Source of the DNA: Takakia lepidozioides | Lineage: Eukaryota; Plantae; Bryophyta | Assembly: GCA_030704615.1 (NCBI GenBank) | Contig: CM060733.1 | Location: 32,426,001-32,490,000 of the forward strand | DNA length: 64,000 nucleotides | Reading direction: 5' to 3' | Shown here: positions 1,553 through 55,395 of the stretch, in pieces | How positions within the stretch are numbered: the stretch's first letter is position 1 | Layout: each line of letters begins with the position of its first letter | Notes under the pieces: generated by a model | Databases searched by the model: none | Seen by the model: the letters and a program-made list of their open reading frames with translations, nothing else | What the model was told of the DNA's origin: nothing | Program-made: the position numbers and the translations under genes

Positions 1553-4500
1553 CTCCCACTCAATTAAACCATATCATTGAGCTACTTCGTTTGTCTTTGG
1601 AGAAGAGACATCAAGTAAGGCTGAACACTTCATGTGTTTTGTTTATGGTAGACTCTTCGTCAAAACATCCGCAACCATATCTCCTGTAGCACAATAGATC
1701 ATCTTGATCTCTCCCTTACATACAACTTCCCGTATGTAGTGATGTTGCACTTCAATGTGCTTCGTCCTTGAATGATACTTCGGATTCTGACTTAGTGCAA
1801 TCGCACTTTGATTGTCACAATAGAGAGTCGTAGGTAGTGATTGAAGATTATCCAAATCTCCAAGCAACTTCCGTAACCAAATAGCCTCATTTGCTGCTTG
1901 TGTAATGGACATGTACTCAGCTTCTGTTGATGACAACGATGTTGCAACTTGTCGTTTGCTAAACCAAGATACAGCTCCACCTGCTAGGAGAAAACAATGG
2001 CCTGAAGTTGATTTTCTACTATCAACGTCTCATGCCCAGTCAGCATCAGCAAACCCCAACAAACGTGGATCTTCCACTCTCTTGTAGAGTAGACCAGAGG
2101 TTGATGTTCCTCTTAGATATCGAAATATCCTCTTCACTGCTTTCCAATGGGTTTGTCCGGGATTTGAAAGAAATTGTGAGACCACTCCCACTGAATGTGC
2201 AATGTCTGGCCTAGTACAAACCATGCAATACATCAAACTGCCGACTGCACTTTGATAAGGAGTTTTCCTCATATCTTCTTGCTCTTCTTGAGTCTTAGGT
2301 ACCATATCCTTCGTAAGTTTCAAACCAACTTCGAGAGTATGTTGGCTTATTCATCTCCAACTTAAACCTTTGTAGAATTGTCTCAATGTATTGTCGTTGA
2401 TGTATGAATACTGTATGGTTCACTCGATCTTTGCTGATTTGAATACCAAGACAGAACCGAATCTCACCCATGTCAGTCATGGCAAACTCAGCACTCAATA
2501 GTGTTTTGGTTTCTGGTAACAACCTTTGATGATCGTTGGTAACAATGATTGTGTCATCCACATATAGAGCTATGATCACAAATTGTTCTCCCATCTTTTT
2601 TACATAGATGTTTGTGTCAGCAATGCTTCGCTCAAATCTTGTCTTTAAGAGGTAAGCATCGATCCTGGCATACCAAGCTTGAGGACTTTGTTTGAGTCCA
2701 TACAAACTCTTTTGCAGCTTACACACAATCTCACTTCCTCCTTGTACAAACCCTTCAGGTTGTCTCATATAGATCTCTTCTTGTAGTTCTCCATTCAGAA
2801 AATGTCGTCTTAACATCCATTTGATGAACTTCGTGATCATGTTGAGCTGCAAGAGCTAACAACGCTCTGATAGAAGAAATCTTCACCACTGGTGAGAAGG
2901 TTTCATTGTAATCCACTCCTTGAACTTGTGCATAGCCTTTAGCTACAAGACGAGCTTTGTAACGGTAAATAGATCCATTAGCTTTGTACTTCAACTTGAA
3001 GATCCACTTGCAACCAATGGCTCTTCGTCCTACAGGCAACCTAGTGAGTGTCCATGTTTTGTTTTGCATCAATGAATCCAACTCCGAGTTGATTGCTTCT
3101 TCCCATTGTAGTTTCTATGGAGAGCGCATCGCTTCCTCATATGTAGCAGGTTCAACCACTTGTGATGCTTCTTCCATAGCTTCAATGGCACTTATAGATG
3201 TAATCAGTCTACTAGGAGCTTTTCTTTCCCGTTGAGATCTCCTTGGAATTGGCACATCTTCAACTTCATCTCTAGAGTCCATATCAACAAGTGGTTCACC
3301 AACTTCGACTCCTTGATCAACTCCATCAAGTTAAACACCTCCATCATTTGTTTTAGCCATCTCTTGTATTGGCTCCTCATAAGACTCCTCTTGGAAATGG
3401 TGTAATGGCTCTAAGCTCATTCCCATGTTATCTTCTCCTACTACCAAAGAGGGTATGAAGCCTTCATCAAACACTACGTCCCTACTGTGTTTGACAGCCT
3501 TAGTTGTCTTATTGAACAACTTATATCTCTTCACACCTTCTGTGTAACCAATGAAGATGCATCCTTCTGATTTGGAGTCAAGTGTCATTCGCTTCTGAGT
3601 AGGGATATGGACATATACACGACATCCAAAAATCCTACAATGAGCCACACTAGGCTTCTGACCACTCCATACCTCTTCTGGTGTTTTTCCCAACACTGAT
3701 TTGGTAGGTATTATGTTGTGAAGATATGCTGCAGTGCCAACAGCTTCTGCCAAAAAATGATTTGAAATATTCACTTCTTTCAACATACTCCTTGCAAATT
3801 CTTGCAGTGATCTATTCATCCGCTCAGCTACACCATTCTTGCTCCTCCAAGTGATGTGGTTTGCATTGGCCCGCACACATCAGAATATACAATCTCCAAT
3901 ATACTTGTGGCTCTTCGTCCACCATCCTTAGGAATTTGACCTCGATGTTGCTTCCCTTCCAAGCAACCTTTGCATAGACGCATATCGCTCGTCTCTTTCA
4001 ATGGTAGTCATTCCATAAGATGACTTGAGAGTTGCATCTGTCTCAACTTCTTAATGCTCACATGACCTAACCTTCTATGCCACAACTTTGTTTCTGACAT
4101 GACAGGTGTAGATCCCAACTGTGGTGAAAATGTGGTAAGAGCACTAGAGACATGATGTTGTAATCTATACAAGCAATTATCAAGAATAGCTCTTGCTACC
4201 ACAGCTCTTGAGCTATCTGTGATAGTACAACTCTCATATTGGAATACCACTCTGTATCTCTTTGCAACAATTTGCCTTACAGACAACAGGTTCTTTGTTA
4301 AAGTAGGGACATGTAGGAGATTTTTCACCTCTATGGTTTCCCCTTCATTGAGCATAAGAGAGACTAAGCTTTCCCCACCAATGACATGTTTGCTATCATC
4401 TCCCAAAAAAACATATTGTGTAGGTGAAAGAGATCTATAGGATAAGAAATGTTCTCTCTCTGAACTCATATGTTGAGATGCTCCTGAATCAACATACCAC

Positions 4501-4940
4501 ACATGCTTCTGTCTAGTAGTGGCTGAGAGAGACACAACAAATAGAATAGTCTTCCTCTAATGAGTAGTTATGTTTCTTTGACTCTCTCTGTTGCGCTCAT
4601 CTGCAATGCGCTTTCTACAATCCTTGATCATGTGACCAAGTTTCTTGCAATAAAAGCACCTCACTTTGGCCTTTTTCATCTTTGAGCTAGATTGAGGTTT
4701 CTGAAACCTCTGGGACTTCTGAGACATATGTGAAGGGAGTCTTCTATTCAAGACTACTACAGTCTTGCCTGTGAACAAAGCTTTGTCTACCTCTGTAGAC
4801 ATACCTTGACTTTTTCTTCTTGTTTCCTCCTTGAGGAGAAGTCCTATGACAACATCAATAGTTAAGTTGGTTTGTCCTACTAGAGACACCACAAAACCAT
4901 TATAGGATTCAGATAAGGTTGTCAATAACACCACTACCAA
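1410..4940 (-). mobile_element. Ty1/copia LTR retrotransposon, 3' part (gag C-terminus, PR, INT, RT, RNase H, PPT, truncated 3' LTR), degenerate
   Basis: Zn knuckle CFYCKKLGHMIKDC (4557-4940); protease WYVDSGAS and LWHRRLGH (4008-4535); integrase NGVAERMNRSL (3331-3876, core partly deleted); RT YKARLVAKGY, LYGLKQ, YVDD (2030-3081); RNase H SSTEAEY, YCDNQSAI (1643-1936); PPT TTGAGTGGGAG then LTR start TGTTAG at 1552. Confidence 0.95.
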
Positions 4941-5230
4941 GGCAAAAAGGTGAATACCTGTAACATTTCATAGACAAGCAGACGCATTCAGCATAGGAAC
5001 TAGTGTGAGAAGCTGAGTTGGATGTTTCCTAGAATAAATCGAGGCTGCCATTGTCAGCTACTAGCAGCGAGGCAAGGATGAATGCATGATTTGTGCAGAG
5101 GCATGTGTAGCTGAAGGAACAAAGAGAGTGTGGGTCCAGATTCATCCAAGAGGGCCAGATTTCAAGCACAAGATTACCTATGATTCCCTGTGGATCAATA
5201 GCTACAAGAAACCTGCATGGGTAGATGGTC
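4941..5230 (+). pseudogene. OSB/PDF motif piece: end of exon 1 (GKK|gt), intron, exon 2
   Basis: GGCAAAAAG|GTGAAT donor at 4941-4955; exon 2 reads IHPRGPDFKHKITYDSLWINSYKKPAWVDG, matching the PDF motif (PDFKHK...LW...P.WV). Confidence 0.8.
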
Positions 5231-21289: not shown

Positions 21290-21655
21290 GAATCAGATGT
21301 GCCCAGCCAGCACTCTCATGAAGCATTACAACGAGGCTTCCCTCTCTATGTATGAGGTTATTGCCCATGCTAAGATTTTGTGTCGACACGAGTATGAATC
21401 TTAAGAACATCAAGGGTGAGAGCCTTCTCTGCACCATGTGATGCTGAAGAAACTCATTTGTGAGAGGACTTCCACATTATTACCCTTACAGTGACAAGCA
21501 TGCAAGTACCCATAGCACACATATTCAAACATCACATTACAACAAATGTATGTACCTCAATGTTCACTCAATGCAGCTGCACCCTTGCTCCTTTAAGGTA
21601 CATTTTCTTGAGCGTGTCCCCAGCGAGCTCCAGCATGGGTGTTCAGTAGCAGCAC
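21290..21655 (-). pseudogene. Decayed E2/E+/DYW-like extension of the PPR gene
   Basis: After the stop: VLLLNTHAG, KEQGCSCIE, EVHTFV, then HGAEKAL and QNLSM, resembling the HxEKLA and KNLR motifs; frameshifted. Confidence 0.5.
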
Positions 21656-23782
21656 CTAAGTTGTAGTATGCTGTGGATCCAACTGCAGAAGGCGATTTGC
21701 CACGTGTTGTGCTAGCTCTACATTACCATGAATTCTGCAGGCACCAAGCAAGGCTCCCCACACCCCAGAATCTGCTTGGATCGGCATTTCCTTAATGAAA
21801 GCATGTGCCTCATCCAACAACCCTGCACGGCCCATAAGATCCACCATGCAGCCAAAATGCCCCAACATAGGTGTGAGGCCATGATCTTGACTCATGGATT
21901 CAAAGTAGCGACGGCCTTCATCCAGTAGGCCTACATGGCTACATGCAGAGAGAAGAAATATGAAGGTGATACAGTCTGGATTCAAACCCTCCTGTTGCAT
22001 CTGTTCAAACAGTTGAAAGGCCTCCCTGCAATTTCCATGCTGAGCATAGCCAGCAGTCATCACATTATATGATACCACACTTCGTTCAGCCATCTTATTA
22101 AACACATTGCGTGCATCCTTTACACTCCCACATTTTGCATACATGTCGACAAGGGCAGTCTCCAGAATGAGATCTGGGGCAATTCCAGCTTTGCAGATGT
22201 CAGCATGGACCTCTTTGCCCTTTCCGAAGGATGCCAGACTGGCGCATGCATTGAGAACGGAAACGAATGTGATCTTGTCAGGTGTCACACCTTCCCGTAT
22301 CATGAGCTCATAGATGTCCAAAGCCTCCCTACCATTCCCGTGCTGAGCATATCCTGCAATCATTGCACTCCATGACACCACATTCCGGTGAGCCATATTG
22401 TCAAACACTCGACGTGCATCCTCAATGCTCCCACATTTGGCATACATGTCAGCAAGTGCAGTCTCCAGAATGATATCTGCCGCAACTCCAGCTTTGTGGA
22501 TGTCAGCATGAACCTCTTTGCCCTTTCCCAGGTCTCCTATGGTGGCACAAGCATTGACAATGCAAATGAACGTTACCCTATCAGGCGTCATCCCTTCCCA
22601 TATCATCCGCTCATAGATCTCAAAAGCATCCCTCCAACATCCATGCTGAGCATATCCTGCAATCAATGCGCTCCATGAGACCACATCTCGTTTAGCCATA
22701 GTGTCAAACACTTGACGGGCATCCTTCATGCTCCCACACTTTGCATACATGTCAGCAACGGCAGTCTCCAAAATGATATCTGCCCCAATTCTAGCTTTGC
22801 TAATGTCAGCATGAATGTCTCTGCCCCTTTTCAGGGCTTGAAGGCTGGCGCACGCATTGAGAACGCAGAGGAATGTGACCTTGTCAGGTGTCACCCCTTC
22901 CCATATCATTTGCTCATACATCTCCAAAGCCTCCATACCACACCCATGCTGAGCATATCCTGCAATCATTGCGCTCCATGACACCACATTCCGTTGTGCC
23001 ATATTCTCAAACACTTGACGCGCATCCTCTATGCTTCCACATTTGGCATACATGTCAACAAGAGCAGTCTCTAGGATGATATCTGCCCCGATTCCAGCTT
23101 TGATAATATCAGCATGGATTTCTTTGCCCTTTTCCAGGGCCTGAAGACTAGCACACACACTGAGAATGCAAGTGAAGGTGACCCCAGTGGGAGTGACCCC
23201 TTCCTGCATCATTTGTCTATAGATCTCAAATGCCTCCCTACCATACCCATGCTTCGCATATCCTGCCAACATTGTGGTCCACGTATATACATCTCGTTGA
23301 GGTATTTTGTCAAACAATTGCTGTGCATCCACCATGCTCCCACTCTTTGCGTACATGTTGACAAGGGTGTTAAGTAGAAAGATGTTTGGCTTGAATTGAC
23401 AGTGGATAACCTGGGCATGCACCTGCTTTCCCATTTCTAGGTCTTTAATTCTGATGCACTCCTGCAAGAGGCGCACATAACTGTTGGAGTCTGCTGAGAT
23501 GCCTTGTTGATTCAAAATATGCAGCGCCTCTTTCAGTTGTCCTGCCTTACATTGTGTGCTTACGTCCCCACAAGTGCCAGAAGAGTTCTTGTTGACTCCC
23601 TCTACTGGTCCTCTTTCAAAAGTAGCAGTCATGGAGTAGATGCCTGACTCTGACACCTGTGCCTGATGCAGCCCTGCCATCCTGCATGACTCAAAACTGT
23701 CGGTTACACAGACAAAGTCACCTAAGGTATGCCAAAGTTCATTGATACTTGAAAGAACGTGAGGAGAACAGCCTGTTGCCAT
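21656..23782 (-). CDS. PLS-class PPR protein ORF (708 aa) ending in the E region at a premature TAG
   Basis: Repeated P-L-S triplets (VVSWSAMIAGYAQHG / PDKVTFLCVLNACA / LETALVDMYAKCGS) followed by WGALLGACRIHGNVELA. The TAG replaces the Tyr of YVLL. The true start is probably in upstream exons. Confidence 0.92.
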   Translation of the reverse strand: MATGCSPHVLSSINELWHTLGDFVCVTDSFESCRMAGLHQAQVSESGIYSMTATFERGPVEGVNKNSSGTCGDVSTQCKAGQLKEALHILNQQGISADSNSYVRLLQECIRIKDLEMGKQVHAQVIHCQFKPNIFLLNTLVNMYAKSGSMVDAQQLFDKIPQRDVYTWTTMLAGYAKHGYGREAFEIYRQMMQEGVTPTGVTFTCILSVCASLQALEKGKEIHADIIKAGIGADIILETALVDMYAKCGSIEDARQVFENMAQRNVVSWSAMIAGYAQHGCGMEALEMYEQMIWEGVTPDKVTFLCVLNACASLQALKRGRDIHADISKARIGADIILETAVADMYAKCGSMKDARQVFDTMAKRDVVSWSALIAGYAQHGCWRDAFEIYERMIWEGMTPDRVTFICIVNACATIGDLGKGKEVHADIHKAGVAADIILETALADMYAKCGSIEDARRVFDNMAHRNVVSWSAMIAGYAQHGNGREALDIYELMIREGVTPDKITFVSVLNACASLASFGKGKEVHADICKAGIAPDLILETALVDMYAKCGSVKDARNVFNKMAERSVVSYNVMTAGYAQHGNCREAFQLFEQMQQEGLNPDCITFIFLLSACSHVGLLDEGRRYFESMSQDHGLTPMLGHFGCMVDLMGRAGLLDEAHAFIKEMPIQADSGVWGALLGACRIHGNVELAQHVANRLLQLDPQHTTT

Positions 23783-23852
23783 ATATCAACAGAGTTACAA
23801 AACGATGGGCTGTCATCTACTTGGAGGAAGAAACTGTTTGAATGGAACCACT

Positions 23853-24055
23853 TAATTATTATCACGACAATACCTGTTGTGTTCTTGGCCTGCGGCTCCA
23901 TGATGTACATCAACATTAGAACCATCATTGGATTGTGCTTGACCTTGTGTCATGGCATGTAGCTCTGATTTCACCCAAGGAGGGTTTGTTGAATTCTCAA
24001 TCCAAAGGACCTCGTTTGTGTCCTTATGCCTGAAGTCTGGTGATCGGGCACTTTT
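23853..24055 (-). CDS. Exon encoding the C-terminal half of an OSB/PDF motif
   Basis: tacag|AAA acceptor; reads KSARSPDFRHKDTNEVLWIENSTNPPWVKSEL; same frame as the downstream PPR ORF; possible donor CAG|GTATTG near 23853. Confidence 0.8.
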
Positions 24056-24291
24056 CTGTAAAACTAACAGTGGGTAGCTGAGCAGCCATAGCTTGGACTA
24101 CAGCTTCATATGGACCAGGCTACAACCATCCACAGCTCCACACATCGTTCAAATAATAGGGAACAACCGTGAAGAGTATGAAGAGCATTATAAGGAACTG
24201 GAGACAATCCTGTGAACAAAGGATCATCATGCCAGCTTCAGTCACAAGCCTCCTTGACAAACTCTGACTAATTAAATTAAGATATGCTCAC

Positions 24292-24370
24292 CTTATCAAA
24301 CCTGTTGTCCCACCACTTTGATGGATCTGCGAAGAACACCTGCCAGAGTCGTTTTCGCTCATTGCTTGAC
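24292..24370 (-). CDS. Exon encoding the N-terminal half of an OSB/PDF motif
   Basis: tgcag|G acceptor, reads SSNERKRLWQVFFADPSKWWDNRFDK, AAG|GTGAGC donor. It splices in phase 0 to the 24055 exon, giving a full canonical PDF motif. Confidence 0.85.
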
Positions 24371-25116
24371 CTGCATACAAGGACTACACGAAGATGAGGA
24401 CTCTGTCGGCTTCCAATTGCCTCATCTCCATTGAGGGGTGCTAGTGCTTGAATGATCTTTAGCAGCTCAAATTGACCAGGTCTTCCCCAACAATCTCATG
24501 GTTTTCTGTGCATCTTCTGTGTCTTTGATTATTTGCAAGGACTCTCTCACCCCAGCCCTTTCCTTAACAATGAAGTGTCAAATTTAAGACCAAATTGGAT
24601 TTTTGACATACTCAACAGAAAGTACAACAATGTTTTTACTCCTATGGAAGTTTGGAGTGACATTGGACCAGTTCAGAAAATTATCAAGCAAGGGGCGCAA
24701 TAACATTGTCAATCAGCTTCTGAAATAGAAGTGCTCCGATGAACAAGTCCCTGGATCTTTTGCTCAGGTTGTTTGGAAGATTGAAGTGAATTCTTCCGCT
24801 GGAGGAAGGGCATCATTGGAAATCAGTTCGAAAATTCTGCTGCAAGGGGGTTGATAGGGTAGTGAGATCTTTGTACTCCCACCCTCAAGGACGGTGTGAC
24901 TGACACTGCCATCACAGACAAGTGCGCAATATGGTGTTGGATTGGGAACCTAGTCCTCGTGCAATGTATGAGGTTTAATATGCTCCCTGATATTATGTTG
25001 TTTGACTGTGGCCCATGGGCCATATTGCTTCCCGTGGCAGTTATAATTCTCCTCTTTTGCTTCATGCAATTGTCTTAAGTAACATAAACAGTTTCAAAAT
25101 TTTGAATTTCAAGACA

Positions 25117-25420
25117 TCAATATATGAAGCGAGACGTTTGTTTTGTTTTGTTTAGTTTGTTTGTTTTGTTTTGTCACGTTGAGATGTCCCAAACCGTGAG
25201 GCCCCAGCCCTGGTGCTTGGTACCATTGGATAGCAAAGTGGGCATTCCTGGACAATGGTTGGAGCCTCGACAGGAGAGATATCAAGGGAAAGGTCTCCGG
25301 TTCAAATCTGGTCGTAGGCTCTGGAGAAAAAAAATGATTAGATATGGCTTGCTTCATATATTGATAAACTTGGACTTAGATGACATTGGACACTTGGGCC
25401 AACGGCACAGGCTACCCTAG
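25117..25420 (+). mobile_element. Non-autonomous Helitron-like element
   Basis: A|TC 5' end and CTAG|T 3' end preceded by GC-rich GGGCCAACGGCACAGGC; internal (GTTTT)n; 15-bp inverted repeat ATCAATATATGAAGC (25116-25130) / GCTTCATATATTGAT (25351-25365). Confidence 0.6.
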
Positions 25421-25595
25421 TACTGATGGAAGGAGCACAAGCTTGGCGCTTGCATTCAAATATTACTAGTGGACTACTTCACCCGAGACGGTAGATCTGG
25501 GATGGGTCAATGACCACATAGAGCTCTGGATTACTCCGATGCACACTGTCGAAATGAGTTAAAAAAAGTAGAGAAAAGAGTAACACGTCTATACC

Positions 25596-25772
25596 TTTTT
25601 TCGGTTTTCCTAGAGGCTGGTGAGGCCCCCTATCCGTCTCTGCCATGGCCAAGCTGAACGCCGTCCGCTCCACAGCCTGGCCCCTCAATCTGCTGCATGA
25701 TGTGAGACCCTCGCAAGGAAGAGATAGGGTTACCACATTGCGCAGGAGAGTGGAAGCGCGCCTTGCAATCAT
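25596..25772 (-). CDS. Probable first exon with an organellar transit-peptide-like N-terminus, candidate 5' end of the PDF-PPR gene
   Basis: IARRASTLLRNVVTLSLP...SRLRGQAV is Arg/Ser-rich and acid-poor and ends at an AAG|GTATAG donor. The link to the downstream exons is inferred from strand and position only. Confidence 0.4.
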
Positions 25773-27345
25773 CTCTACCCACCCCCCCACCCCCCAATAC
25801 ACAAAAACTTCAGTAAAGGACAATTTCATAATGCAATGTTATCTCGAAAGAATTGCATTATGGAGAAGATCATGCAGCAATTGGGTAGCAGATTGAGTCA
25901 AGCCTCTTTCATCACTTTGACAACATTCAAGATATCACAGGAATTATTTCAAATATTTCAGGCAACCTTGTTGGGAACCTGACCCTGTCAGATTCAATCA
26001 GCAGATATTTTGCAAGGGTTGGAGCACACACCATCCACCAACCCATCTCTTCCCACTGAACACTGCCAGACCCTGACGTTGCATCTCCACGAAATATTTA
26101 TTCATTAAAGCTATCTATGTACCTATCCTTGGATGGACTGCCCACCAAACTCCACTTTCTATCTCAGAGCTCCCGTCTGATTTGAGAAGAAAAACCACAT
26201 TATTTCAGGTCCGACTCTACAATGAGATAATATGTTGGAGCCCGAGTCAGCTGAAACAATGAGTCCTGGATACTGAGCTCAATCTGTCTGCTTTCAGGTT
26301 TCTAAAGTAGGAAACTCGTTAATGCATGTACATATTCAGGCAGCAGCCCTCAGCATGCACGAAACAAACTGCACCTTCATTTGTCTCAGTAAAAACACCC
26401 AGACCCTGGCATGAAACGAAGACGGAGAATACTTCCATGCCCAAACTCAAACCTTACATGCGGAAATCCTTAGTGACCAGAAATGCTAGTGAAGTACTTT
26501 AAATGCCACTTGCTCGGTCTACAACCGTCTCTTCTCTGCTCGAGATGAGAGTACTGTAATGAAAATAGCAAATTGTTCTTGAGCCAATTGAAGAACATGA
26601 TTCAAAGTATCCGGGTCTACAGCTTTCCCTATGACAACAACCCAGGATCTTGCTTGGGTAGCGAGTGAAGTCGGCATTACGTGTACAGGTGTTGTACCCA
26701 TACCCATCTACTGCATCCTCTGTTTTTATGGCATTCCAATACTTGCACACAATCGGCAGCGGAGGGTATCATTGACTCATTATTGCTGGAGGGTGTTTCA
26801 GAAGGACATCGTCTCTAGCACAAACCTGATATGCAAGTCCCAATTTCGTGGGTGCAGGAGTGGTGCTATTCATTGCATACTGAGCATTTTCGAGACAAAC
26901 TGCACGCCATATCTTTTGTGTGCTTGCTGTGAAATTGCAGCATGTTTGGCGTCTCGGCCACCGTCACGAATAGATTAGCCAACCCTAGGCTCCGAAGCTC
27001 AGAAGCTGTCCTTCAGCATTCCTTCTCGCTCCGCTTTGTGATCGACACGTTATGACCATGGTTCTATTTGGGATGCATAGAATTCATGGTGAGGTACGGT
27101 AAGATTTGCAAATAAAAAAAACAGACAAGTGGAATTTGGACCATGATGTGCTTTCAAAGCTTGTCTACTATACAGCTGTCCTCTAGGGAATGTTAATACG
27201 TGCCTCTATACTATGTACGAACACCTTTGGTCAATGTGAATGTTCAAAGTAACAGTGAAGACACTTGGTGATTTTTACAGGTAGCAGAGTCTCTTGATAA
27301 AGGATCATGTCTTGAGACACTGTATGTCACTGCTGTAAGAAAGAC

Positions 27346-28181
27346 TGTTGGAAGTAATTAAACATATCTAGAAGACTAAGAGTCTTGAAGGCCAAAGGTT
27401 TAGAAGTCTAAGAGACTATCTTGTTTAACTCACCTTTGGAAGGTGAATGGCTAGAAGGTGGATGGTCACCATAGTGGAAGTGGAAGTGATCAAGTAGGAC
27501 TTTCTAAAGACCTTCTTGTACAAGCTCGGGGGTGAAGCCACTAGTCTAAGTGTAAGAGTATGATGGTGGTTTCTATGGTTGGGAGGAGAGCTTTAGTTTT
27601 AGCTTTAGTCTAAGACTTTAGTTCTTGTTCATGTTCTTGCTCAATTCTAACATGGTATCAGAGCCATTCTTCTCTAGGTGAGAGTTGGTAGTTGAGATTG
27701 AGAGAACTTGATAATGGCTGGAGCGTCGTCTTCTAGCAATCCTCCTTCTATGTCTATGACGAGTGCATTAGATGTGAGAGTGGAAGATTGATTCAATAGA
27801 GCTAACTATCAAACCTGGAAGTTTAGGATGGAGATGGTTCTTCTAGACAAAGATCTATGGGGAGTGGTTGATGGATCAGTCCCAAGACCTGACATTATTG
27901 TTGGCCAAGCCATATGGGATAGGAAAGATCAGAAAGCAAGAGCTAGCATCATCACAAGCTTGAGAGACAATCAGTTGCATCTCATTATAAGTGCTAAGAA
28001 TGCTAAGGATGTTTGGCACAAACTAGCAAGCATATATGAGACGAAGGATGTGACATCGCAAGTGTATGCGACGCAAAAGTTCTATGGTCTGAAGATGACC
28101 GAGTCAGACTCAGTTGAACAACACTTGAATTTGTTTTGTGTGTTACGAGATCAACTAGTCTCTGTGGGAACTAATGTGACT
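27346..28181 (+). mobile_element. Ty1/copia 5' part: full LTR (27346-27652), tRNA-iMet PBS, gag N-terminus
   Basis: LTR TGTTGG...CTAACA; PBS TGGTATCAGAGC at 27653; gag NYQTWKFRMEMVL...LWGVVDG...WDRKDQKA...LVSVGTNVT, truncated at 28181. Confidence 0.92.
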
Positions 28182-29270
28182 TGACTGGGGCATAATAGTA
28201 TTCATTCCACAACTTCTCCTCATCTTTGTTACTTGTTTTTTGATACTTTCCTGTTGTCACATTGGCAGTATCATGTCAAAGTCACTCCAAACTAGATTCA
28301 CTCAACCAGCTAACTTGCAGAATTCAACATGGAAATTTAGGGCCGATTCTGGATAGAGGGAAAAACAAGGTGAAATGTGTTGAATAAGATGTCTTCATTA
28401 GCAGTGTCTGATTTTATAAATTGTGTCGCTGCTGCCAGTTGACCATCTACCCATGCAGGTTTGTTGTAGCTATAGAGTCAATCTGGAGCTTGATTAGCAG
28501 CTGACAGTGACGGTGTGAAGTTCTTCCATAAAACACCCCAACCTAGGACTTAACAGTAGTTCCAATTTTGAATTGCAACTGCTTCTCTCTGTAGTCGAAC
28601 AAGCACTCACATTTTTGTCTCCATTGTCCCCCCCACTGACTGGGGTCGGGAAGTGTTCATCCCAAAGCTTCTCTTTGTCTTGTTATCTGTTTTTGGGTAC
28701 TTTCCTACTGCCACATCAGCAGTAACTTGTCAAAGTCACTCCAAACCACCCCACATCCACCCAACGAGCTAACTTACAGCGTTCAATATGCAAATTCAGG
28801 GCTGGGTCTGATGAGAGGGAAAAATAGGCTGAAATAGGTTGAAGAAGAAGGTGCCCTCACCACATTGTCCTCAACCTTGTGTCATGACCCATGGAGGATT
28901 TGACTGACCATGCACCCAAGATGACCTCTTGTGTGTGCGAGGTGTGTGCTGCTTCCACAGGGAATTGCGATCTGGAGCTTGAAATCCGGCCCTCTTGGAT
29001 GAATCTGGACCCACACTGCTCACTGCTCCTTCAGCTAACCATGCCTCTACACAAATCATGCATACATCCTTGCCTTGATGCCAGCAGCTGACAATAACAC
29101 TCTAGAATTGTTCCAGCAAACACCCCAACCCTACTTATCACACTAGTTACTATGCTGACTTGCGTCTGCTTCCAACAGGCATTCACCTTTTTGCCTGGAT
29201 TGTTCCACCATTGACTGGGGTCGGAACCGTATTCATTCCACAGCTTCTCCACATCTCTATTATTTGTTTT
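28182..29270 (-). pseudogene. Tandem degenerate OSB/PDF units (about three)
   Basis: EKLWNEYGSDPSQWWNNPGKK|gt (~29186-29252), IHPRGPDFKLQ (~28970-29003), EKLWDEHF (~28650-28680), SYNKPAWVDGQL (~28437-28472), DEEKLWNEYY..PSQ (28182-28225). Confidence 0.75.
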
Positions 29271-29289
29271 TCGATACTTTCCTGTCGAT

Positions 29290-30223
29290 ACTTTCTTGAC
29301 TGGGGTCGTCTACAGTGAAAGGTCGTAGAGACGTTTAAGATATATTGGCGCTTTCGGATATTTGGGCCATTCAGCACTGAACATATGTCTATGCTTCACG
29401 TAGTTCTCATTGCTGAATTCCATGACCTTGTAAAACCTTCTTCCAAACAAAGCCAGCCCTATATCCGGACATTTTCTAACGGTCCAGTGTTCCAAAAGTA
29501 GACCTCAAAATGCTTAAGGACCCATTTCAGGAAGTCGTCCAACCCATTTCGGACTGTAAGCTTGAATTTTCCAGCGCACACACAAGGATGGGTCGCGGGA
29601 GGGGATGTCGGGCCATCTCGGAGGTAAACCTCACCAAGGTAACCGACATCAAGAACCAGGACGTAGTATCCTGGTCGAGATCCTTTCGGTCCCTCAGAGA
29701 GGCGATACCAATCCAGTGGGTTCACAGATTTGTGATAGTCGATCGGAGGGTGAATCATATCATCATGTGGAATAACAGAACAATTAATTTATTTTGAAAA
29801 CTAGAAGAAGGAGAAAGAAGAACATAGCTAAGATGGTTATGAGGTATATACCCGTTTCGGGGAGGGGTTCCGAATTTGCTGCTGTTGCTGCTCGCTCTCT
29901 TTTCCTTCACGGTGAGCAACGACCATCTCCGGCTCATCTCCTCCATCTCGCAACGTCGACTGGGCAGTGGAGGTTGTTTGTTTGACCGGATCAGTTGGGC
30001 TGGCCCTTATTGTTAAGTCCACCTGCCTCCTCACTGTTTGAGTCGCAATGGATTATGTCCGGGTTTGTGTGATTTCCTCCAATTTCGGTTCATGGATCTA
30101 TACGAGTTTTCTTACCGTCAGTCACATGTAAAGTTCAAGAAGATGAGAAATATTAAGATACAGATCAGGTATTGCCAAAAACACAACCAGAACACAACCA
30201 GATGCAATACACACAATTTGTTC
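29290..30223 (-). pseudogene. Distal exons of the unknown multi-exon gene interrupted by the Ty3 insertion
   Basis: Minus-strand ORF pieces at 29310-29758 and 29837-30034; contains the 24-bp palindrome (29952-29975) that is also found right of the Ty3 element. Confidence 0.45.
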
Positions 30224-48300: not shown

Positions 48301-49589
48301 TGTTCATCCATGTGGTTGATTTCATCAACAGATATTATGGCAATTGTGACTTCATCTGACAGTTCCGATAGATGTAGTCTATACTCCACCCTCATACTCC
48401 AATTTAATTCCAATTGTTTTTTTATCAGTCCCAGTGTAGATCCAAACATTGACTTTACTTTTTCAATCCATATTGTTTTCTCTGGAGAGTCGAAACGGAC
48501 AAGGTGGGCCCACGGGGGCATTTCAGACGGCATGCAGAAGTGGGGTCAACGACTCCGGAGTCATAGCAAAAATCCGGGCTATTTAATTAATTGCATAAAT
48601 ACATAAAATTTGAAAAAGTGAAAATTACAAGTGGTTCTAATTACTGCACATGCGACTAGAAAATTTTCATTCATAATTTGATTTATGGAATAAAGATATT
48701 TATTCATTAAAGTGAATATGTAGTCGACTCAACGATTCCATGAACCACTGCGCATTGATTGCACCCGTGATTGGGGGCCACATTTGTTGACGTGTGTTTC
48801 ACAAAAACAGGTAAAGAAAATGTGGCCTTGGGGAATATATATTTTAATATGTACTGCCTCCACCTGGAAGTGACATGGAAAGTCCATGGTGACATCGTGA
48901 AAACTGGAATTGTAGGGTTTGTCGTTCTGAACACCGCCCTGGTGGACATGTATGCCGAATGGGGTCGAAGATGCGAAGGTAGTGTTCAACTGTGGCTCAA
49001 CGAGATGTGGTGTCGTGGAGTGCGATGATCGCATTGGCAGCAAGGCAAGGATGTATGCATGATTGTGCAGAGGCAGTGATAGCTGAAGGATCAAGATAGA
49101 GTGTAGGTCCATATTCATCCAAGAGGGTCGGATTTCAAGCTCCAGATTACCTATGGATCCCTCTGAAGGATAGCTACAAGAAACCTCCAGGGGTAGATGG
49201 TTAGCTGGAAGCGGCAGCTGTAGCGGCACAGTTGATAAAATCAGGCACCTCAACCATGACCACAACTTCTGGAAGAGGATCAAGCGAGGGAGTCCACAAT
49301 GCCTCTTCTGGCACTTATGGGCATGTGAAGATGCTTTATGAGGCAGACAGACTGAAAGAGGCTCTACAAACTTTAAACCAAAGAGGCATTTCAGCAGATG
49401 TAGATACGTATGTGTGTCTCTTGCATAAGTGCATCAAGATGAAAGGCCTATAAGTTGGAAAGCAGGTGCACACTCACATTGTCCAAAGTGGATTCACGCC
49501 GAGCGTTTTTCTACTCAACAACCTTGTCAACATGTATGTTAAGGGGAGCATCATGGATGATCACCAAGTGTTCAACACAAAATGCCTCA

Positions 49590-49760: not shown

Positions 49761-50449
49761 ATAGACGTTACCAGCACAGTTTTAGATAACTGCAATTGAT
49801 GGTGTCATCAATTAAAATTGAATTAACTCATTAAAACCAGCAAATATATATGTCATTAGATTCCCAGCTTCAAGACGCACCCATAGCAACTCTCCAATCA
49901 TGAATCTGATAAGAAATGACTCCGCTATGGACTTTTGAACACCGTCATTGTGGACTATTACCGCAATGAATGGAATTACAATGGACTCAAGTTCTCCTAT
50001 GTGCCATTGGAGTTTAGAGATAAGGTGGCCATTTTGGTCCACATCATAAGTATGGATTTGAAGTGGCAAAATCATTTGTCATTTGACTCATATAATAGGT
50101 GTTTTTTGAAAAGTCCATAGCTCATTTGTTTTTTGGATTTTGGGTGTCATTTGTTTTCTAGAAGTATAAAATTCTATAATCTTCAATGGCTAGGTCTTTG
50201 ATCACGTGGAATATAATGTTGGCAGGATTACCAAGCATGGGCGTGGTACAAATGCTTTGGAGACATGTGCGCAAATGATGCGCGAAGGGGTGGAGCCCAA
50301 CCACATCGCGTTTGTATGTGTTTGCAATGCGTGTGCAAGCCTGGAAAAGGGGAACAAGGTCCATGGTGACATCGGTCAAAGTTGGAATTGCACCGGATGT
50401 CATTTTGAACACTGCCCTGACCTGGACATGTATGCCAAATGTGGATGCA

Positions 50450-52350
50450 TTGAGGATGCAAAGGGAGTTTTTGACACTATGGCTGAACGAGATGTGGTGT
50501 TGTGGAGTGCGATGCTTGCAGGGTATGCACAACAGGGACGTGGGATGGAGGCTTTGGAGACCTATGATCCAATGATGGGGGAGGGGGTGAAGCCCGACCA
50601 CTTTGTGTGCATTTGCAATGCTTGTGCAAGCCTGGCAGCCCTGGACAAGGGTAAAGAGGTGCATGGGGATATCATCAAAGCTGGAATTGTACCAAATGTC
50701 ATTCTAAACACTGCCTTGGCAGCTCTGGAAAAGGGGAAAGAGGTCCATGGCGACATCTTCAGAGCTGGAATTGTACCAAATGTCAGTCTGAACCATACCC
50801 TGGTGGACAAGTATGCGAAATGTGGGTGCATCGAGCCTGGACGAGGGCAAAGAGGTGCATGGGGTATCATCAAAGCTGGAATTGTACCAAATGCCATTAT
50901 GAACACTGCCCTGGCACCTCTGGAAAAGGGGAAAGAGGTCCATGGCCACATCTTCAGAGCTGGAATTGTACCAAATGTCATTTTGAACCATACCCTAGTG
51001 GACATGTTTGCAAAATGTGGGTGCAAAGGGATCTAGGATCTAGGATGCAAAGGGAGTGTTCGACACTATGGCTGAACGAGATGTGGTGTCATGGAGTGCG
51101 ATGCTTGCAAGGTATGCACGGCAGGGACGTGGGATGGACGCACCTATGAGCAAAGGATGGGGGAAGCACATCATGTTTGTGTGCATTTGCAATGCTTGTG
51201 CAAGCCTGGCAGCCCTGGAGAAGGGCAAGAGGTGCATGGGGATATCATCAAAGCTGGAATTGTGCCAAATGTCAATTTGAACACTGCCCTAGCAGCTTTG
51301 GAAAAGGGGAAAGAGGTCCATGGTGACATCTTCAGAGCTGGAATTGTACCAGATGTCATTCTGAACAATAGCCTAGTGAACATGTTTGCAAAATGTGGGT
51401 GATGTAGGATGCAAAGGGAGTGTTCGACACTATGGCTGAACGAGATGTGGTGTCGTGGAGTGCGATGCTTGCAGGGTATGCACGGTAGGGACGTGGGATG
51501 GAGGCTTTGGAGAGCTATGAGCAAATGATGGGGGAAGCACATCATGTTTGTGTGCATTTGCAATGCTTGTGCAAGCCTGGCAGCCGGCCTGGAGAAGGGC
51601 AAGAGGTGCATGGGGATATCATCAAAGCTGGAATTGTGCCAAATGTCAATCTGAACACTGCCCTGGCAGCTTTGGAAAAGGGGAAAGAGGTCCATGGTGA
51701 CATCTTCAGAGTTGGAATTGTATCAGATGTCATTCTGAACAAAACCCTGGTGAACATGTTTGCAAAATGTGGGTGCATCTAGGATGCAAAGGGAGTGTTC
51801 GACACTATGGCTGAACGAGATGTGGTGTCGTGGAGTGCGATGTTTGCATGGTATGCACGGCAGGGACGTGGGATGGAGGCTCTGGAGAGCTATGAGCAAA
51901 TGATGGGGGAAGCTCATCATGTTTGTGTGCATTTGCAATGTGCGTGCAAGCCTGGCAGCCCTGGAGAAGGGCAAGAGGTGCATAGGGATATCATCAAAGC
52001 TGGAATTGTGCCAAATGTCAATCTGAACACTACCCTGGTAGCCTTGGAAATGGGGAAAGATGTGCATGGCGACATCTTCAGAGCTGGAATTGTACCACAT
52101 GACATTCTGAACAATATGATGTGCTTGCAGGGTATGCACAGCAAGGATGTGGAATGGAGGCTTTGGAGACCTATGAGCAATGGAAGCACATCATGTTTGT
52201 GTGCATTTGCAATGCTTGTGCAAGCCTAGCAGCCGGCCTGGAGAAGGGCAAAGAGGTGCATGGGGATATCATCAAAGCTGGAATTGTACCAAATGTCAAT
52301 CTGAACACTGCCCTGGCAACTTTGGAAAAGGGGAAAGAGGTCCACATGGC
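50450..52350 (+). repeat. Tandem duplications of a ~365-375 bp PPR-coding unit
   Basis: GATGCAAAGGGAGT(G/T)TT(C/T)GACACTATGGCTGAACGAGATGTGG at ~50455, 51043, 51408 and 51783. Confidence 0.85.
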
Positions 52351-53539
52351 GACATCTTCAGAGCTGGTGAATGCCTGTCAGATTACCAGATGCAAAGAGG
52401 TGCATTGTTGCATCGCCAAAGGCAGTAGCTGCAGCGGCACAGTTGATAAAGTCAAGCACCTCAACCATGACCACAACTTCTGGAAGAGGATCAAGAGAGG
52501 GAGTCCACAATGCCTCTTCTGGCACTTATGGGCATGTGAAGATGTAGACTGAAAGAGGCTCTACTGACTTTAAACCAAGGAGGCATTTCAGCAAATTCAG
52601 ATACGCATGTCTGTCTTTTGCATAAGTGCATCAAGATGAAAGGCCAAGTGAAGCTAGAAAGCAGGTGCACACTCACATTATCCAAAGTGCACGCCAAATA
52701 TTTTTCTACTCAACACCCGTGTCAATATGTATGTTATGTGCGGGAGCATCATGGATGCTCACCAAGTGTTCAACATAATGCCTCAACGATGTTTCATCAC
52801 GTGGAACACGATGCTTGCAGGGTGTGCACAGCAGGGGCGTGGTATGGAGGCCTTGGAGAATGTGGTGAGGGCACCTTCTTCTTCGACCTATTTCAGCCTG
52901 TTTTTCCCTCTCATCAGACTCGGCCCTGAATTTACATATTGAATCGTCGAGGACAATGTGGTGAGGGCTCTATGGTGGTTTGGAATGACTATGACAAGTA
53001 ACTGTCGATGTGGCAGCAGAAAAGTATCCAAAATAGATAACAGAGATGAGGAGAAGGTGTGGAATGAATACTTTGTTGACCCCAGTGAATGGTGGAACAA
53101 TCGAGGCAAAAAATTGAATGCCTATTAGATGACAGAGAGTAGCAGACGTAATTCAGCATAGGAACTAGTGTGATTGGGTGTTTCCTAGGTTGTCATTGTC
53201 AGCTGCTAGCAGCAAGGGCAAGGATGAATGCATGATTTGTGCAGAGGCATGGATAGCTGAAGGAGAAGGGATAGAGTGTGGGTCCAGATTCATCCAAGAG
53301 GGCCGGACTTCAAGCTCCAGATTACCTGTGATTCCATGTGGATCAATAGCTACAAGAAACCTAAATGGGTAGATGGTCAACTAAAGGTAATAGTTGCAAC
53401 GGCACAGTTGATAAAATCAGGCACGTCCTTAACCATGACCGCAACTTCTGAAAGAGGATCAAGAGAGGGAGTCCACAATGCCTTTTCTGCGGGGCATGTG
53501 AAGATGCTTTGTGAGGCAGACAGACTGACAAAGGCTCTA

Positions 53540-54264: not shown

Positions 54265-55395
54265 CTGCTCTAGGTCTGGAAGCTGGAATCAGGTGCACAC
54301 TCACATTATCCAAAGTGGATTCATGCCAAATGTTTTTTCTACTCAACACCCTTGTCAACATATATGTTAAGTGCGGGAGCATCATGGATGCTTGCCAAGA
54401 TTTCTACAGAATGCCTCAGCGATCTTTGATCATGTGGAATATAATGTTGGCAGGATTTACCAAACATGGGTGTGGTAGGAATGCTTTGGCAACCTATGAG
54501 CAAATGTTGCACAAAAGGGGTGCCCAACCACATCACGCTTCCGCATGTTTGCAATGCGTGTGCAAGCCTAGGACCTCTAGAAAAGGGGAAAGAGGTCCAT
54601 GGTGACATCATCAAAGCTGGAATTGTACCAGATGTCATCCTGAACACTCCCCTGGTGGACATCTATGCCAAATGTGGGTGCATTAAGGATGCGAAGTGAG
54701 TTTTCAACACTATGGCTGAACCAAATGTGGTGTCATGGAATGCGATGCTTGCAGGGTATGCATAGCAGGGACATGGTATGCAGGCTTTGGAGACCTATGA
54801 TCAAATGATGGGGGAAGGGGGCGCACCTTCTTCAATAGCACAACGGCTACAAGTGGGTAGATGGTCAACTGGAAACAGCAATGGTAGCAACACAATTGAT
54901 AGATTAAGGCCCACTGCTAATGAAGGTACCTTCTTCAACATATTTCACCCTGTTTTCCCCTGCTATCAGAGTCGTCCCTAAATTTTCATGTTGAATTCTA
55001 CAAGTTAGTTCGTTGGTGGATCTAAGGTGGTGTTGGAGTGATTTTGACATGTTACTGCCAATGTATAAGTCGTACTTGAACCCAAAGTCGCTCGGTATCT
55101 TCCTTCCAAAATATAAAGCGCTCGTCGACCCATACAAGGACAGGTTTCTTCTGGATGAACTCAAACCGCACCTGGAAGAGTTGCGGTTATTCGGAAAAGA
55201 CGCTGATATATTCAACGTGGAAAAACCCATAAGATGTCCACCGTATAATGACCTAAAGGTCAAATGCCTCTTGCTATGGGATTTGCAGTGGCAGGTTTAT
55301 CTTGTAAAACAAAAATTTCCTGACGCTTCATTGGAACAGTTTGAAACGTAGATGGCTGCTCTAGATTTTCATGAACCTCGACTGTCCAGTGGACG

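What the first reader, a model, noticed from the sequence alone, without database searches (positions are those of the whole stretch)
21656..24370. OSB/PDF ssDNA-binding motif fused to a PLS-class PPR array
Seen: exons 24370-24292 and 24055-~23853 splice to RLWQVFFADPSKWWDNRFDK|KSARSPDFRHKDTNEVLWIENSTNPPWVKSEL, directly upstream of and on the same strand as the 708-aa PPR ORF. Known: PDF motifs are the ssDNA-binding repeats of organellar OSB/PTAC9 proteins, and PLS-PPRs are sequence-specific organellar RNA binders and editing factors. I do not recall this fusion being characterised. Inference: a nucleoid or R-loop-tethered PPR, or a PPR-guided ssDNA binder. The exact splice into the PPR ORF is unresolved (unspliced stops lie between).
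Basis: partly seen in the sequence, partly recalled or inferred. Interest (0 to 1): 0.8.

Follow-up and report, generated by a model that had tools for sequence, protein, structure and literature searches.

The report
Truncated PPR gene carrying OSB PDF module
This plant gene joins the small "PDF" single-strand-binding module of organellar OSB proteins to an RNA-reading PPR repeat protein; I found this combination in a lycophyte, in Sphagnum mosses and, in part, in a fern, and in no paper I could search, but this copy has lost its editing (DYW) end.

Summary
Exon A (24370-24292, minus strand) and exon B (24055-23874) each match a profile built only from OSB PDF units (E 1.8e-8 and 2e-13). They meet exactly at profile position 22, so one complete PDF unit is split by a GT..AG intron. 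A second GT..AG intron (23873-23682) would join exon B in frame to the PPR reading frame. RNA-like contigs show the first splice, but only in close paralogs; the second is supported indirectly.

The window has no OB fold, so this is not an OSB gene. The same PDF-in-front-of-PPR layout is annotated in Diphasiastrum and Sphagnum, and partial units are present in Adiantum. Some Diphasiastrum members end in DYW. I found no paper describing the combination. The scan has reported this architecture before, on other DNA of this genome.

New here:
- The intron inside the PDF unit sits at the same place and phase as in two liverwort OSB genes.
- Exons A+B form an 87-codon cassette with matching intron phases on both sides.

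This copy is truncated. A stop replaces the conserved Tyr at the start of E2, frameshifted E2 remnants follow, no DYW is present, and no start-codon exon was found. It cannot deaminate by itself. Whether it is a young pseudogene or a retained RNA binder remains open.

The parts
24292..24370 (-). Exon A (79 nt): first half of the PDF unit, (x)SSNERKRLWQVFFADPSKWWDNRFDK. Its first base completes a codon begun in an unidentified upstream exon (phase 2).
   Evidence: OSB-only PDF HMM positions 2-22, E 1.8e-8. Acceptor tgtatgcag|G and donor AAG|GTGAGC. Contigs of X1 and X2 cover it, all with C>A at 24330, so they come from paralogs.
24056..24291 (-). Intron 1 (236 nt, GT..AG, phase 0), splitting the PDF unit between ...DNRFDK and KSARSPDF...
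   Evidence: Joint 24055->24292 (CT..AC on the + strand, which is GT..AG on the - strand) in contigs of X1 and X2. Depth is zero in bin 24114-24247. Two liverwort OSB genes have an intron at the same place and phase.
23874..24055 (-). Exon B (182 nt): second half of the PDF unit plus a tail, KSARSPDFRHKDTNEVLWIENSTNPPWVKSELHAMTQGQAQSNDGSNVDVHHGAAGQEHN + AG.
   Evidence: HMM positions 22-53, E 2e-13. Collinear tblastn with P0026 residues 94-161, E 2e-15. An X1 contig spans exactly 23873-24057, which is the extent expected if it branches at both splice junctions.
23682..23873 (-). Proposed intron 2 (192 nt, GTATTG...CATGCAG, phase 2, 60% A+T). It would join ...GQEHN-R to MAGLHQ... in the PPR frame.
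   Evidence: Sequence and frame arithmetic. X2 has depth on both sides and none in bin 23712-23845. No joint for it was among the rows shown, and one low-depth X1 paralog contig reads through the donor, so it is not proven.
21656..23681 (-). Exon C: a linker (..QCKAGQLKEALHIL..), then L1-S1, four P1-L1-S1 triplets, P2-L2-S2 and E1, then the TAG stop at 21658-21656.
   Evidence: ORF listed. Pfam PPR families. Motif register. 303-nt repeat family D3. Exact-match contigs at 21739-21946, 22450-22900 and 23222-23466.
21532..21655 (-). Decayed E2 remnant after the stop: VLLLNTHAGARWG (same frame), LKEQGCSCIE (other frame), VNIEVHTFVVM* (third frame). No DYW follows.
   Evidence: An E2-DYW profile aligns the stop to the Tyr of aatYVLLSNIY, and aligns LKEQGCSCIE to kkepgrswie in another frame. 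Both matches are collinear but individually weak. The third piece rests on my reading. No DYW match anywhere in the window.

Best explanation
The locus is one member of a real but unnamed gene family of seed-free plants. In that family, one to three OSB-type PDF modules sit in front of a PLS-class PPR array, and in complete members the array ends in E1-E2-DYW (the RNA-editing deaminase).

**Gene model here (minus strand):** an unidentified 5' exon, then exon A (24370-24292), exon B (24055-23874) and exon C (23681-21656).

**Likely mechanism for the family (inferred):** the PPR tract reads the RNA bases upstream of the target C. The PDF module lies at the protein's N-terminus and so on the 5' side of the bound RNA. 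There it would add a sequence-independent grip on single-stranded nucleic acid, either the RNA itself or exposed organellar ssDNA.

**This copy:** it has lost that family's catalytic end. A TAG replaces the conserved Tyr at the start of E2, the rest of E2 is frameshifted, and DYW is gone. It therefore cannot edit on its own. I read it as a transcribed, recently truncated copy on its way to decay, lying in a cluster of already dead PDF and PPR fragments.
For: **Shown**
- Both halves of the PDF unit match an OSB-only profile and abut at profile position 22.
- OSB proteins match the window only through their PDF parts. No OB fold is present.
- The PDF region of the Diphasiastrum PPR protein P0026 retrieves OSB1/SSB-domain proteins at E 1e-26 to 1e-8.
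- Diphasiastrum and Sphagnum PPR proteins carry 1-3 PDF units N-terminal to the repeats, and seven of them end in DYW. Adiantum PPRs carry partial units.
- The intron inside the PDF unit is spliced out in RNA-like contigs of close paralogs. The depth profile shows three exons separated by empty bins.
- Exons A+B total 261 nt (87 codons), with phase-2 introns on both sides and the same phase at the exon C acceptor. Spacing between PDF units in Diphasiastrum proteins is 75-95 aa.
- The stop falls at the E2 Tyr, the remnants are frameshifted, and there is no DYW.
- Other PDF and PPR pieces in the window are broken.

**From the literature**
- The PDF motif of AtOSB1 is sufficient for ssDNA binding (review PMC6963530).
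Against: - The 2.29 kb of exons A-C has no stop or frameshift, both splice-site pairs are intact, and by my reading all conserved PDF residues are kept. The region just after the stop carries at least two lesions in about 130 nt. That contrast argues the truncated gene was kept by selection for some time.
- About 940 nt of the PPR frame has exact-match contigs in two runs, so it looks transcribed.
- The join of exon B to exon C and the 5' start exon are not demonstrated for this locus.
- X1 and X2 are only guessed to be RNA.
- The role of PDF in a PPR protein has never been tested.
Confidence: 0.5

Rival explanations
1. The truncated product (PDF, PLS array, E1) is the functional form. It would be a non-catalytic, sequence-specific RNA binder that stabilises or marks an organellar RNA, or recruits a deaminase in trans. 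On this reading the TAG is its natural stop.
For: - Exons A, B and C have intact reading frames and intact splice sites across 2.29 kb, while the sequence just past the stop is frameshifted.
- By my reading against alignment A1, all 18 conserved PDF positions are retained.
- Exact-match contigs cover the PPR frame.
- Many annotated Diphasiastrum PDF-PPR proteins also end in or near E1/E2 without DYW.
Against: - No start-codon exon was found. Exon A has no in-frame ATG, and it has an out-of-frame ATG.
- This locus's own PDF exons were not seen in the contigs.
- Differences from paralog contigs are 7 synonymous to 18 non-synonymous, which gives no sign of constraint, though the test has low power and is not lineage-specific.
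- The copy lies among dead copies.
- The truncated Diphasiastrum models may be annotation artefacts.
Confidence: 0.33
2. The PDF exons and the PPR ORF are not one gene. The PPR ORF would be expressed from its own ATG at 23782, and the PDF exons would be a leftover of another, dead gene lying next to it by chance.
For: - The ORF has its own ATG at 23782.
- No joint 23874->23681 was among the rows shown, and one X1 contig reads through the donor into 23750.
- The window holds other orphan PDF pieces.
Against: - The order and spacing PDF, tail, 'LC..G.LKEAL', PPR is collinear with many annotated PDF-PPR proteins.
- The GT..AG pair joins the two frames exactly.
- X2 has no depth over 23712-23845, which includes that ATG, but does have depth on both sides.
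- The exon B contig ends exactly where a splice at 23874 predicts.
Confidence: 0.1
3. The PDF-like exons are a chance resemblance or part of a repeat element, not a homologue of the OSB motif.
For: Related 'HPRGPDFK' pieces recur at three other places in the window. That is how a dispersed repeat would look.
Against: - E-values of 1e-8 and 1e-13 against an OSB-only profile, with exact abutment of the two halves.
- 40-70% identity to liverwort and angiosperm OSB PDF units.
- The intron position is shared with liverwort OSB genes.
- The recurring pieces are themselves PDF units next to PPR fragments.
Confidence: 0.02

Closest known systems
[quoted passage not shown]
   Same: - The roughly 50-aa PDF unit is the same module: LWQ.FF..P..WWDNR..K....PDFKHK.T.E.LW.....PPWV.
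- It matches an OSB-only profile at E 1e-8 and 1e-13.
- It has the same internal intron position and phase as the Marchantia and Calypogeia OSB genes.
   Different: - No OB-fold (SSB-like) domain is present anywhere in the window.
- The PDF unit is N-terminal to a PPR array. In OSBs it lies C-terminal to the OB fold.
PLS-class PPR-DYW organellar RNA-editing factors (for example Physcomitrium PPR56)
   Same: Regular P1-L1-S1 triplets, then P2-L2-S2 and E1. The closest database relatives are PPR proteins with E and DYW domains.
   Different: - It has an N-terminal PDF module that no searchable description of these factors mentions.
- This copy stops at the start of E2 and has no DYW deaminase.
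Unnamed PDF-PPR proteins annotated as hypothetical: Diphasiastrum complanatum O6H91_* (for example P0026, P0167, P0172) and Sphagnum (P0002, P0102, P0013, P0028)
   Same: - Same order: PDF unit(s), a tail such as 'M..GQ.QS', then 'LC.EG.LKEAL', then the PLS array.
- Exon A is 78% and exon B 46% identical to P0026 over the aligned stretches.
   Different: - They have 1-3 PDF units, and several have a complete E2-DYW.
- The Sphagnum gene is a single exon with no intron in the PDF unit.
- The PPR part is only about 50% identical.
PPR proteins with an extra nucleic-acid-binding domain, for example maize PPR4 (N-terminal RRM + PPR)
   Same: The principle is the same: a general single-strand-binding module placed in front of a sequence-reading PPR tract (PPR4 as described in PMC9459714).
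   Different: - The added module is different (RRM versus PDF).
- PPR4 is a P-type splicing factor, whereas this is a PLS-type protein.

Membership tests
OSB family | One or more PDF motifs | tested here: met
   Exons A and B match an OSB-derived PDF HMM at positions 2-22 (E 1.8e-8) and 22-53 (E 2e-13).
OSB family | OB-fold-like (SSB, PF00436) domain N-terminal to the PDF motifs | tested here: not met
   Eight full-length OSB proteins match the window only with their PDF residues. No hit below E 0.1 falls in their OB-fold parts across the 64 kb. Pfam finds no SSB domain in the exons or the ORF.
OSB family | Organellar transit peptide | not testable with these tools
   The 5' exon carrying the start codon was not identified.
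PLS-class PPR editing factors (E/DYW type) | Tandem P1-L1-S1 triplets ending in P2-L2-S2 | tested here: met
   Four 101-aa triplets plus L1-S1 and P2-L2-S2, all in register. A 303-nt repeat family. Pfam PPR E 8e-87.
PLS-class PPR editing factors (E/DYW type) | E1 and E2 motifs | tested here: not met
   E1 is present (GVWGALLGACRIHGNVELAQHVANRLLQLDPQ). The Pfam E_motif match covers only profile positions 1-21 of 63, at 20.4 bits, below the 27.3 cut-off. E2 is cut by a TAG at its Tyr and is frameshifted afterwards.
PLS-class PPR editing factors (E/DYW type) | DYW cytidine-deaminase domain (HxE, CxxC, terminal DYW) | tested here: not met
   tblastn with the C-termini of P0066 and P0010, and an HMM of 55 E2-DYW ends, find no DYW segment anywhere in the window.
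PDF-PPR family (unnamed; Diphasiastrum, Sphagnum, Adiantum) | PDF unit(s) encoded upstream of, in frame with, and collinear with a PLS array | tested here: met
   Collinear tblastn with the N-termini of twelve family members. The GT..AG intron 23873-23682 restores the frame. The join itself is inferred and was not seen in RNA of this locus.
PDF-PPR family (unnamed; Diphasiastrum, Sphagnum, Adiantum) | Complete open reading frame from a start codon | tested here: inconclusive
   There is no in-frame ATG from the stop at about 24498 to the end of exon A. A paralog contig departs from the window at the exon A acceptor, which suggests an upstream exon that I could not locate.

The most novel reading that the evidence does not exclude
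The PDF unit is a mobile, phase-symmetric exon cassette. It would have been copied from an OSB-type gene, with its ancestral intron kept, onto PPR editing factors early in land-plant evolution. There it would act as a general single-strand clamp that binds RNA, or tethers editing factors to transcribed organellar DNA. Truncated PDF-PLS-E1 copies such as this one would then persist as non-catalytic RNA binders.
Probability: 0.3. Interest if true: 0.7.

Novelty: new variant of a known kind. Interest (0 to 1): 0.5.

Why it matters
- **PPR-DYW factors:** they are the model for programmable RNA editing, and published domain schemes list no N-terminal PDF module. If the module contributes affinity or localisation, it is a missing part of how editing factors find their sites in the seed-free plants checked here (a lycophyte, Sphagnum mosses, a fern).
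- **The PDF motif:** it has been known only from OSB proteins, has no solved structure, and is described only as an ssDNA binder. Finding it on RNA-binding proteins makes its nucleic-acid preference directly testable.
- **Origin:** the intron position shared with liverwort OSB genes, together with the phase-symmetric cassette, gives a concrete exon-shuffling hypothesis.
- **This copy:** it is of limited value, because it is truncated and may be dying.

Tried and rejected
- **Pfam on the two exons:** no family. Pfam has no PDF model.
- **Search for a 5' exon:** three-frame reading of 24290-26300, tblastn with twelve N-termini and blastn of 23600-28800 against the window found none. A weak 'RPGQ...NGD' resemblance to P0083 just upstream of exon A is not reliable.
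- **DYW remnants:** none found by tblastn or by HMM. The E2 remnants are collinear, but each is statistically weak.
- **Word search for long proteins with the P0026 PDF region:** only 20 candidates, all Diphasiastrum. It says little about distribution.
- **Diphasiastrum gene structure:** the four Diphasiastrum proteins I looked up are not in the contig index. The Adiantum and pea files are too large.
- **Fold of the PDF unit:** the model is confident (pLDDT 89.3, helix-strand-strand-helix). No solved analogue turned up: Foldseek E > 5, VIA-align best Z 3.6.
- **Synonymous versus non-synonymous differences to paralog contigs:** 7 to 18, uninformative.
- **A decayed second PDF half in 23782-23681:** considered, but the profile gives no support, so I dropped it.
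- **An OSB gene lying upstream:** rejected, because there is no OB fold.
- the joined exon A+B(+C) protein was not searched or folded; each exon was searched by reference.
Full report
**1. What is in the sequence.**

On the minus strand there is a 708-aa ORF at 21656-23782. It is a strong PPR protein: Pfam PPR_2 E 3.8e-87, PPR E 8e-87, and a partial E_motif match below its cut-off.

Upstream on the same strand, 24292-24405 translates to ...SSNERKRLWQVFFADPSKWWDNRFDK. 23853-24055 translates to KSARSPDFRHKDTNEVLWIENSTNPPWVKSEL.... Pfam has no model for these pieces.

**2. Is it a real PDF motif?**

I took the PDF region of a database PPR protein (P0026, Diphasiastrum complanatum) and searched for shorter proteins. 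The 40 hits are mostly proteins named OSB1 or carrying the SSB domain PF00436, from angiosperms and liverworts, at E 1e-26 to 1e-8.

From the PDF units of those hits alone I built an HMM and scored every six-frame piece of the window (3057 pieces).
- 24351-24289 matches profile positions 2-22 (E 1.8e-8).
- 24055-23957 matches profile positions 22-53 (E 2e-13).

The two pieces abut exactly at position 22. Together they are one complete PDF unit split by an intron. In an alignment of 85 PDF units, 5 positions are invariant and 13 nearly so. By my reading, this copy keeps all 18.

Full-length OSB proteins match the window only through their PDF parts. There is no OB fold anywhere in the 64 kb, so this is not an OSB gene.

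**3. Gene model.**

| Part | Coordinates (minus strand) | Notes |
|---|---|---|
| Exon A | 24370-24292 | 79 nt, follows acceptor tgtatgcag\|G |
| Intron 1 | 24291-24056 | GTGAGC...TTACAG, phase 0, between K and K |
| Exon B | 24055-23874 | 182 nt |
| Intron 2 (proposed) | 23873-23682 | GTATTG...CATGCAG, 60% A+T |
| Exon C | 23681-21656 | 2026 nt, PPR frame and stop |

Read unspliced, exon B's frame ends at TAA 23854-23852. The proposed intron 2 joins AG+G (Arg) to ATG GCA..., which is exactly the PPR frame.

Exons A+B total 261 nt, or 87 codons. The acceptor of exon A, the donor of exon B and the acceptor of exon C all have the same phase. The PDF cassette can therefore be repeated or dropped without breaking the frame. 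This fits the 1-3 PDF units, spaced 75-95 aa apart, in Diphasiastrum proteins.

I did not search or fold the joined protein.

**4. Sequencing-run evidence.**

Two small runs of one organism (X1, X2) hold parts of the stretch. They are Logan contigs whose kind is only guessed to be RNA.

I take them to be RNA for two reasons. First, exact-match contigs of depth 7-21 cover parts of the PPR frame (21739-21946, 22450-22731, 22725-22900, 23222-23387, 23358-23466). Second, intron 1 and 24382-25051 have no depth at all.

Contigs in both runs carry the joint 24055->24292. It reads CT..AC on the plus strand, which is GT..AG on the gene's strand. In X2, the depth bins show three covered blocks separated by empty bins at both introns.

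An X1 contig spans exactly 23873-24057. That is the extent expected if it branches at a splice at 24055 and another at 23874.

There are limits to this evidence.
- Every contig over exons A and B differs from the window (for example C>A at 24330 in all of them), so these contigs come from close paralogs.
- The joint 23874->23681 was not among the rows shown.
- One low-depth paralog contig reads through that donor.

In short, the family's splicing is supported, and the PPR part of this locus looks transcribed. A single PDF-PPR mRNA from this locus is not shown.

**5. Relatives.**

The PPR part is at most about 52% identical to database proteins. The best matches are from Diphasiastrum complanatum. 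The organism's own proteins are evidently not in the collection.

- Many Diphasiastrum proteins, and Sphagnum proteins (P0002, P0102), have the PDF motif in front of the repeats. The tail and the 'LC.EG.LKEAL' start of the array match those seen here.
- With the OSB-derived profile, Diphasiastrum proteins have one, two or three units, and seven of the proteins end in DYW.
- Partial units stand at the annotated N-termini of two Adiantum proteins (fern) and of two protein clusters that list Sphagnum members.

By my own tests, then, the architecture occurs in a lycophyte and in Sphagnum mosses, with partial units at the annotated N-termini of two fern (Adiantum) PPR proteins.

Earlier notes of this scan report the same architecture many times on other DNA of this genome, and also in a liverwort. 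I did not test the liverwort case.

**6. Gene-structure comparison (new here).**

- In the Marchantia polymorpha OSB gene, the PDF unit is split as ...WWDNRFNK | KNPKAPDFKHK (AAG|GTGAGA...CTCAG|AAA), phase 0.
- In Calypogeia fissa OSB, the split is the same...WWDNRDTK | RNPKAPDF.
- The window has ...WWDNRFDK | KSARSPDF, at the same place and phase.
- A Ricinus OSB gene has both PDF units in one exon.
- The Sphagnum PDF-PPR gene is a single exon.

The shared intron argues that the module reached the PPR gene as genomic DNA (exon duplication or shuffling), not as a processed copy. The intron would then have been lost in some lineages. Parallel intron gain at an AAG|G site cannot be excluded.

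**7. State of this copy.**

The array reads L1-S1, four P1-L1-S1 triplets, P2-L2-S2 and E1.

The frame ends ...LLQLDPQHTTT-TAG. A profile of 55 E2-DYW ends aligns that stop to the Tyr of 'aatYVLLSNIY'. It aligns LKEQGCSCIE, in another frame, to 'kkepgrswie'. By eye, VNIEVHTFVVM* follows in the third frame. No DYW segment exists anywhere in the window. The product therefore lacks E2 and the deaminase.

At the 5' end, exon A has no in-frame ATG back to a stop at about 24498. It does have an out-of-frame ATG. I could not find the upstream exon.

Against simple decay, exons A-C (2.29 kb) have no lesion, while about 130 nt after the stop carry at least two. That contrast suggests either a recent complex event or continued selection on the truncated gene. 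Differences from paralog contigs (7 synonymous, 18 non-synonymous) do not settle this.

**8. Mechanism.**

Known facts:
- The PDF motif of AtOSB1 suffices for ssDNA binding, and OSBs restrain recombination in organelles (PMC6963530; PMC13393729).
- PPR proteins with an added RNA-binding domain exist, for example maize PPR4 with an RRM (PMC9459714).

Inferred: in PDF-PPR proteins, the module at the N-terminus adds sequence-independent binding to single-stranded nucleic acid next to the PPR footprint, or tethers the factor to exposed organellar DNA.

An AlphaFold model of one unit is confident (pLDDT 89.3), with a helix, two short strands and a helix. It has no detectable solved analogue, so structure gives no further hint.

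**9. Literature.**

No paper in the searchable library holds 'PDF motif' together with DYW. The only paper that pairs 'PDF motif' with 'pentatricopeptide' is a review of mitochondrial DNA replication components (PMC6963530), and its PDF passages concern OSB proteins only. The 2026 study of OSB evolution does not mention PPR. Other searches gave nothing relevant. Subscription papers are not covered.

**10. Verdict.**

The fusion is real as a family and, as far as I could search, undescribed. This copy is a truncated member without a deaminase and with an unresolved 5' end.

Noticed in passing
window 53054-53119 and 53291-53386 (+), with PPR fragments at 48986-49582, 50233-52222, 52724-52855 and 54357-54837 (+): A second PDF unit of a diverged subtype (EKVWNEYFVDPSEWWNNRGKK / HPRGPDFKLQITCDSMWINSYKKPKWV), split by an intron at the same place. 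A linker follows it and breaks off in stops and G+C-rich sequence. Around it are several PPR repeat fragments, making a cluster of broken PDF-PPR copies.
   Followed up: partly
window 28181-29309 (-): A tandem array of at least two to three decayed PDF cassettes, with frameshifts and stops. It lies on the same strand, 3.8 kb upstream of exon A, and has no PPR array of its own after it. It could be the remains of upstream PDF units of the same gene, or a separate dead copy.
   Followed up: partly
window 5143-5226 (+): An orphan second half of a PDF unit (HPRGPDFKHKITYDSLWINSYKKPAWVD, E 5e-9 against the OSB profile). No first half and no PPR array were detected next to it.
   Followed up: no
window 25110-25300 (-): A short element ending in a (CAAAA/CAAAC)n tail. 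It is covered by contigs in both runs although the flanks are not. It looks like a SINE-type repeat.
   Followed up: no
window 27343-27488 and 1410-1555: A 146-nt stretch repeated at 97% identity on opposite strands, probably a dispersed repeat.
   Followed up: no
window 21941-23149 (-): The four P1-L1-S1 triplets are 71-74% identical to each other at the DNA level, in exact 303-nt register. Their specificity positions are nearly the same (P1: S/D; S1: T with D, N or S). The predicted RNA target would be oddly periodic.
   Followed up: partly
L002 (Sphagnum jensenii, gene 2001-4871): The Sphagnum PDF-PPR gene is a single exon, unlike the copy here. The PDF intron was either lost in Sphagnum or the fusion spread there as a processed copy.
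   Followed up: partly
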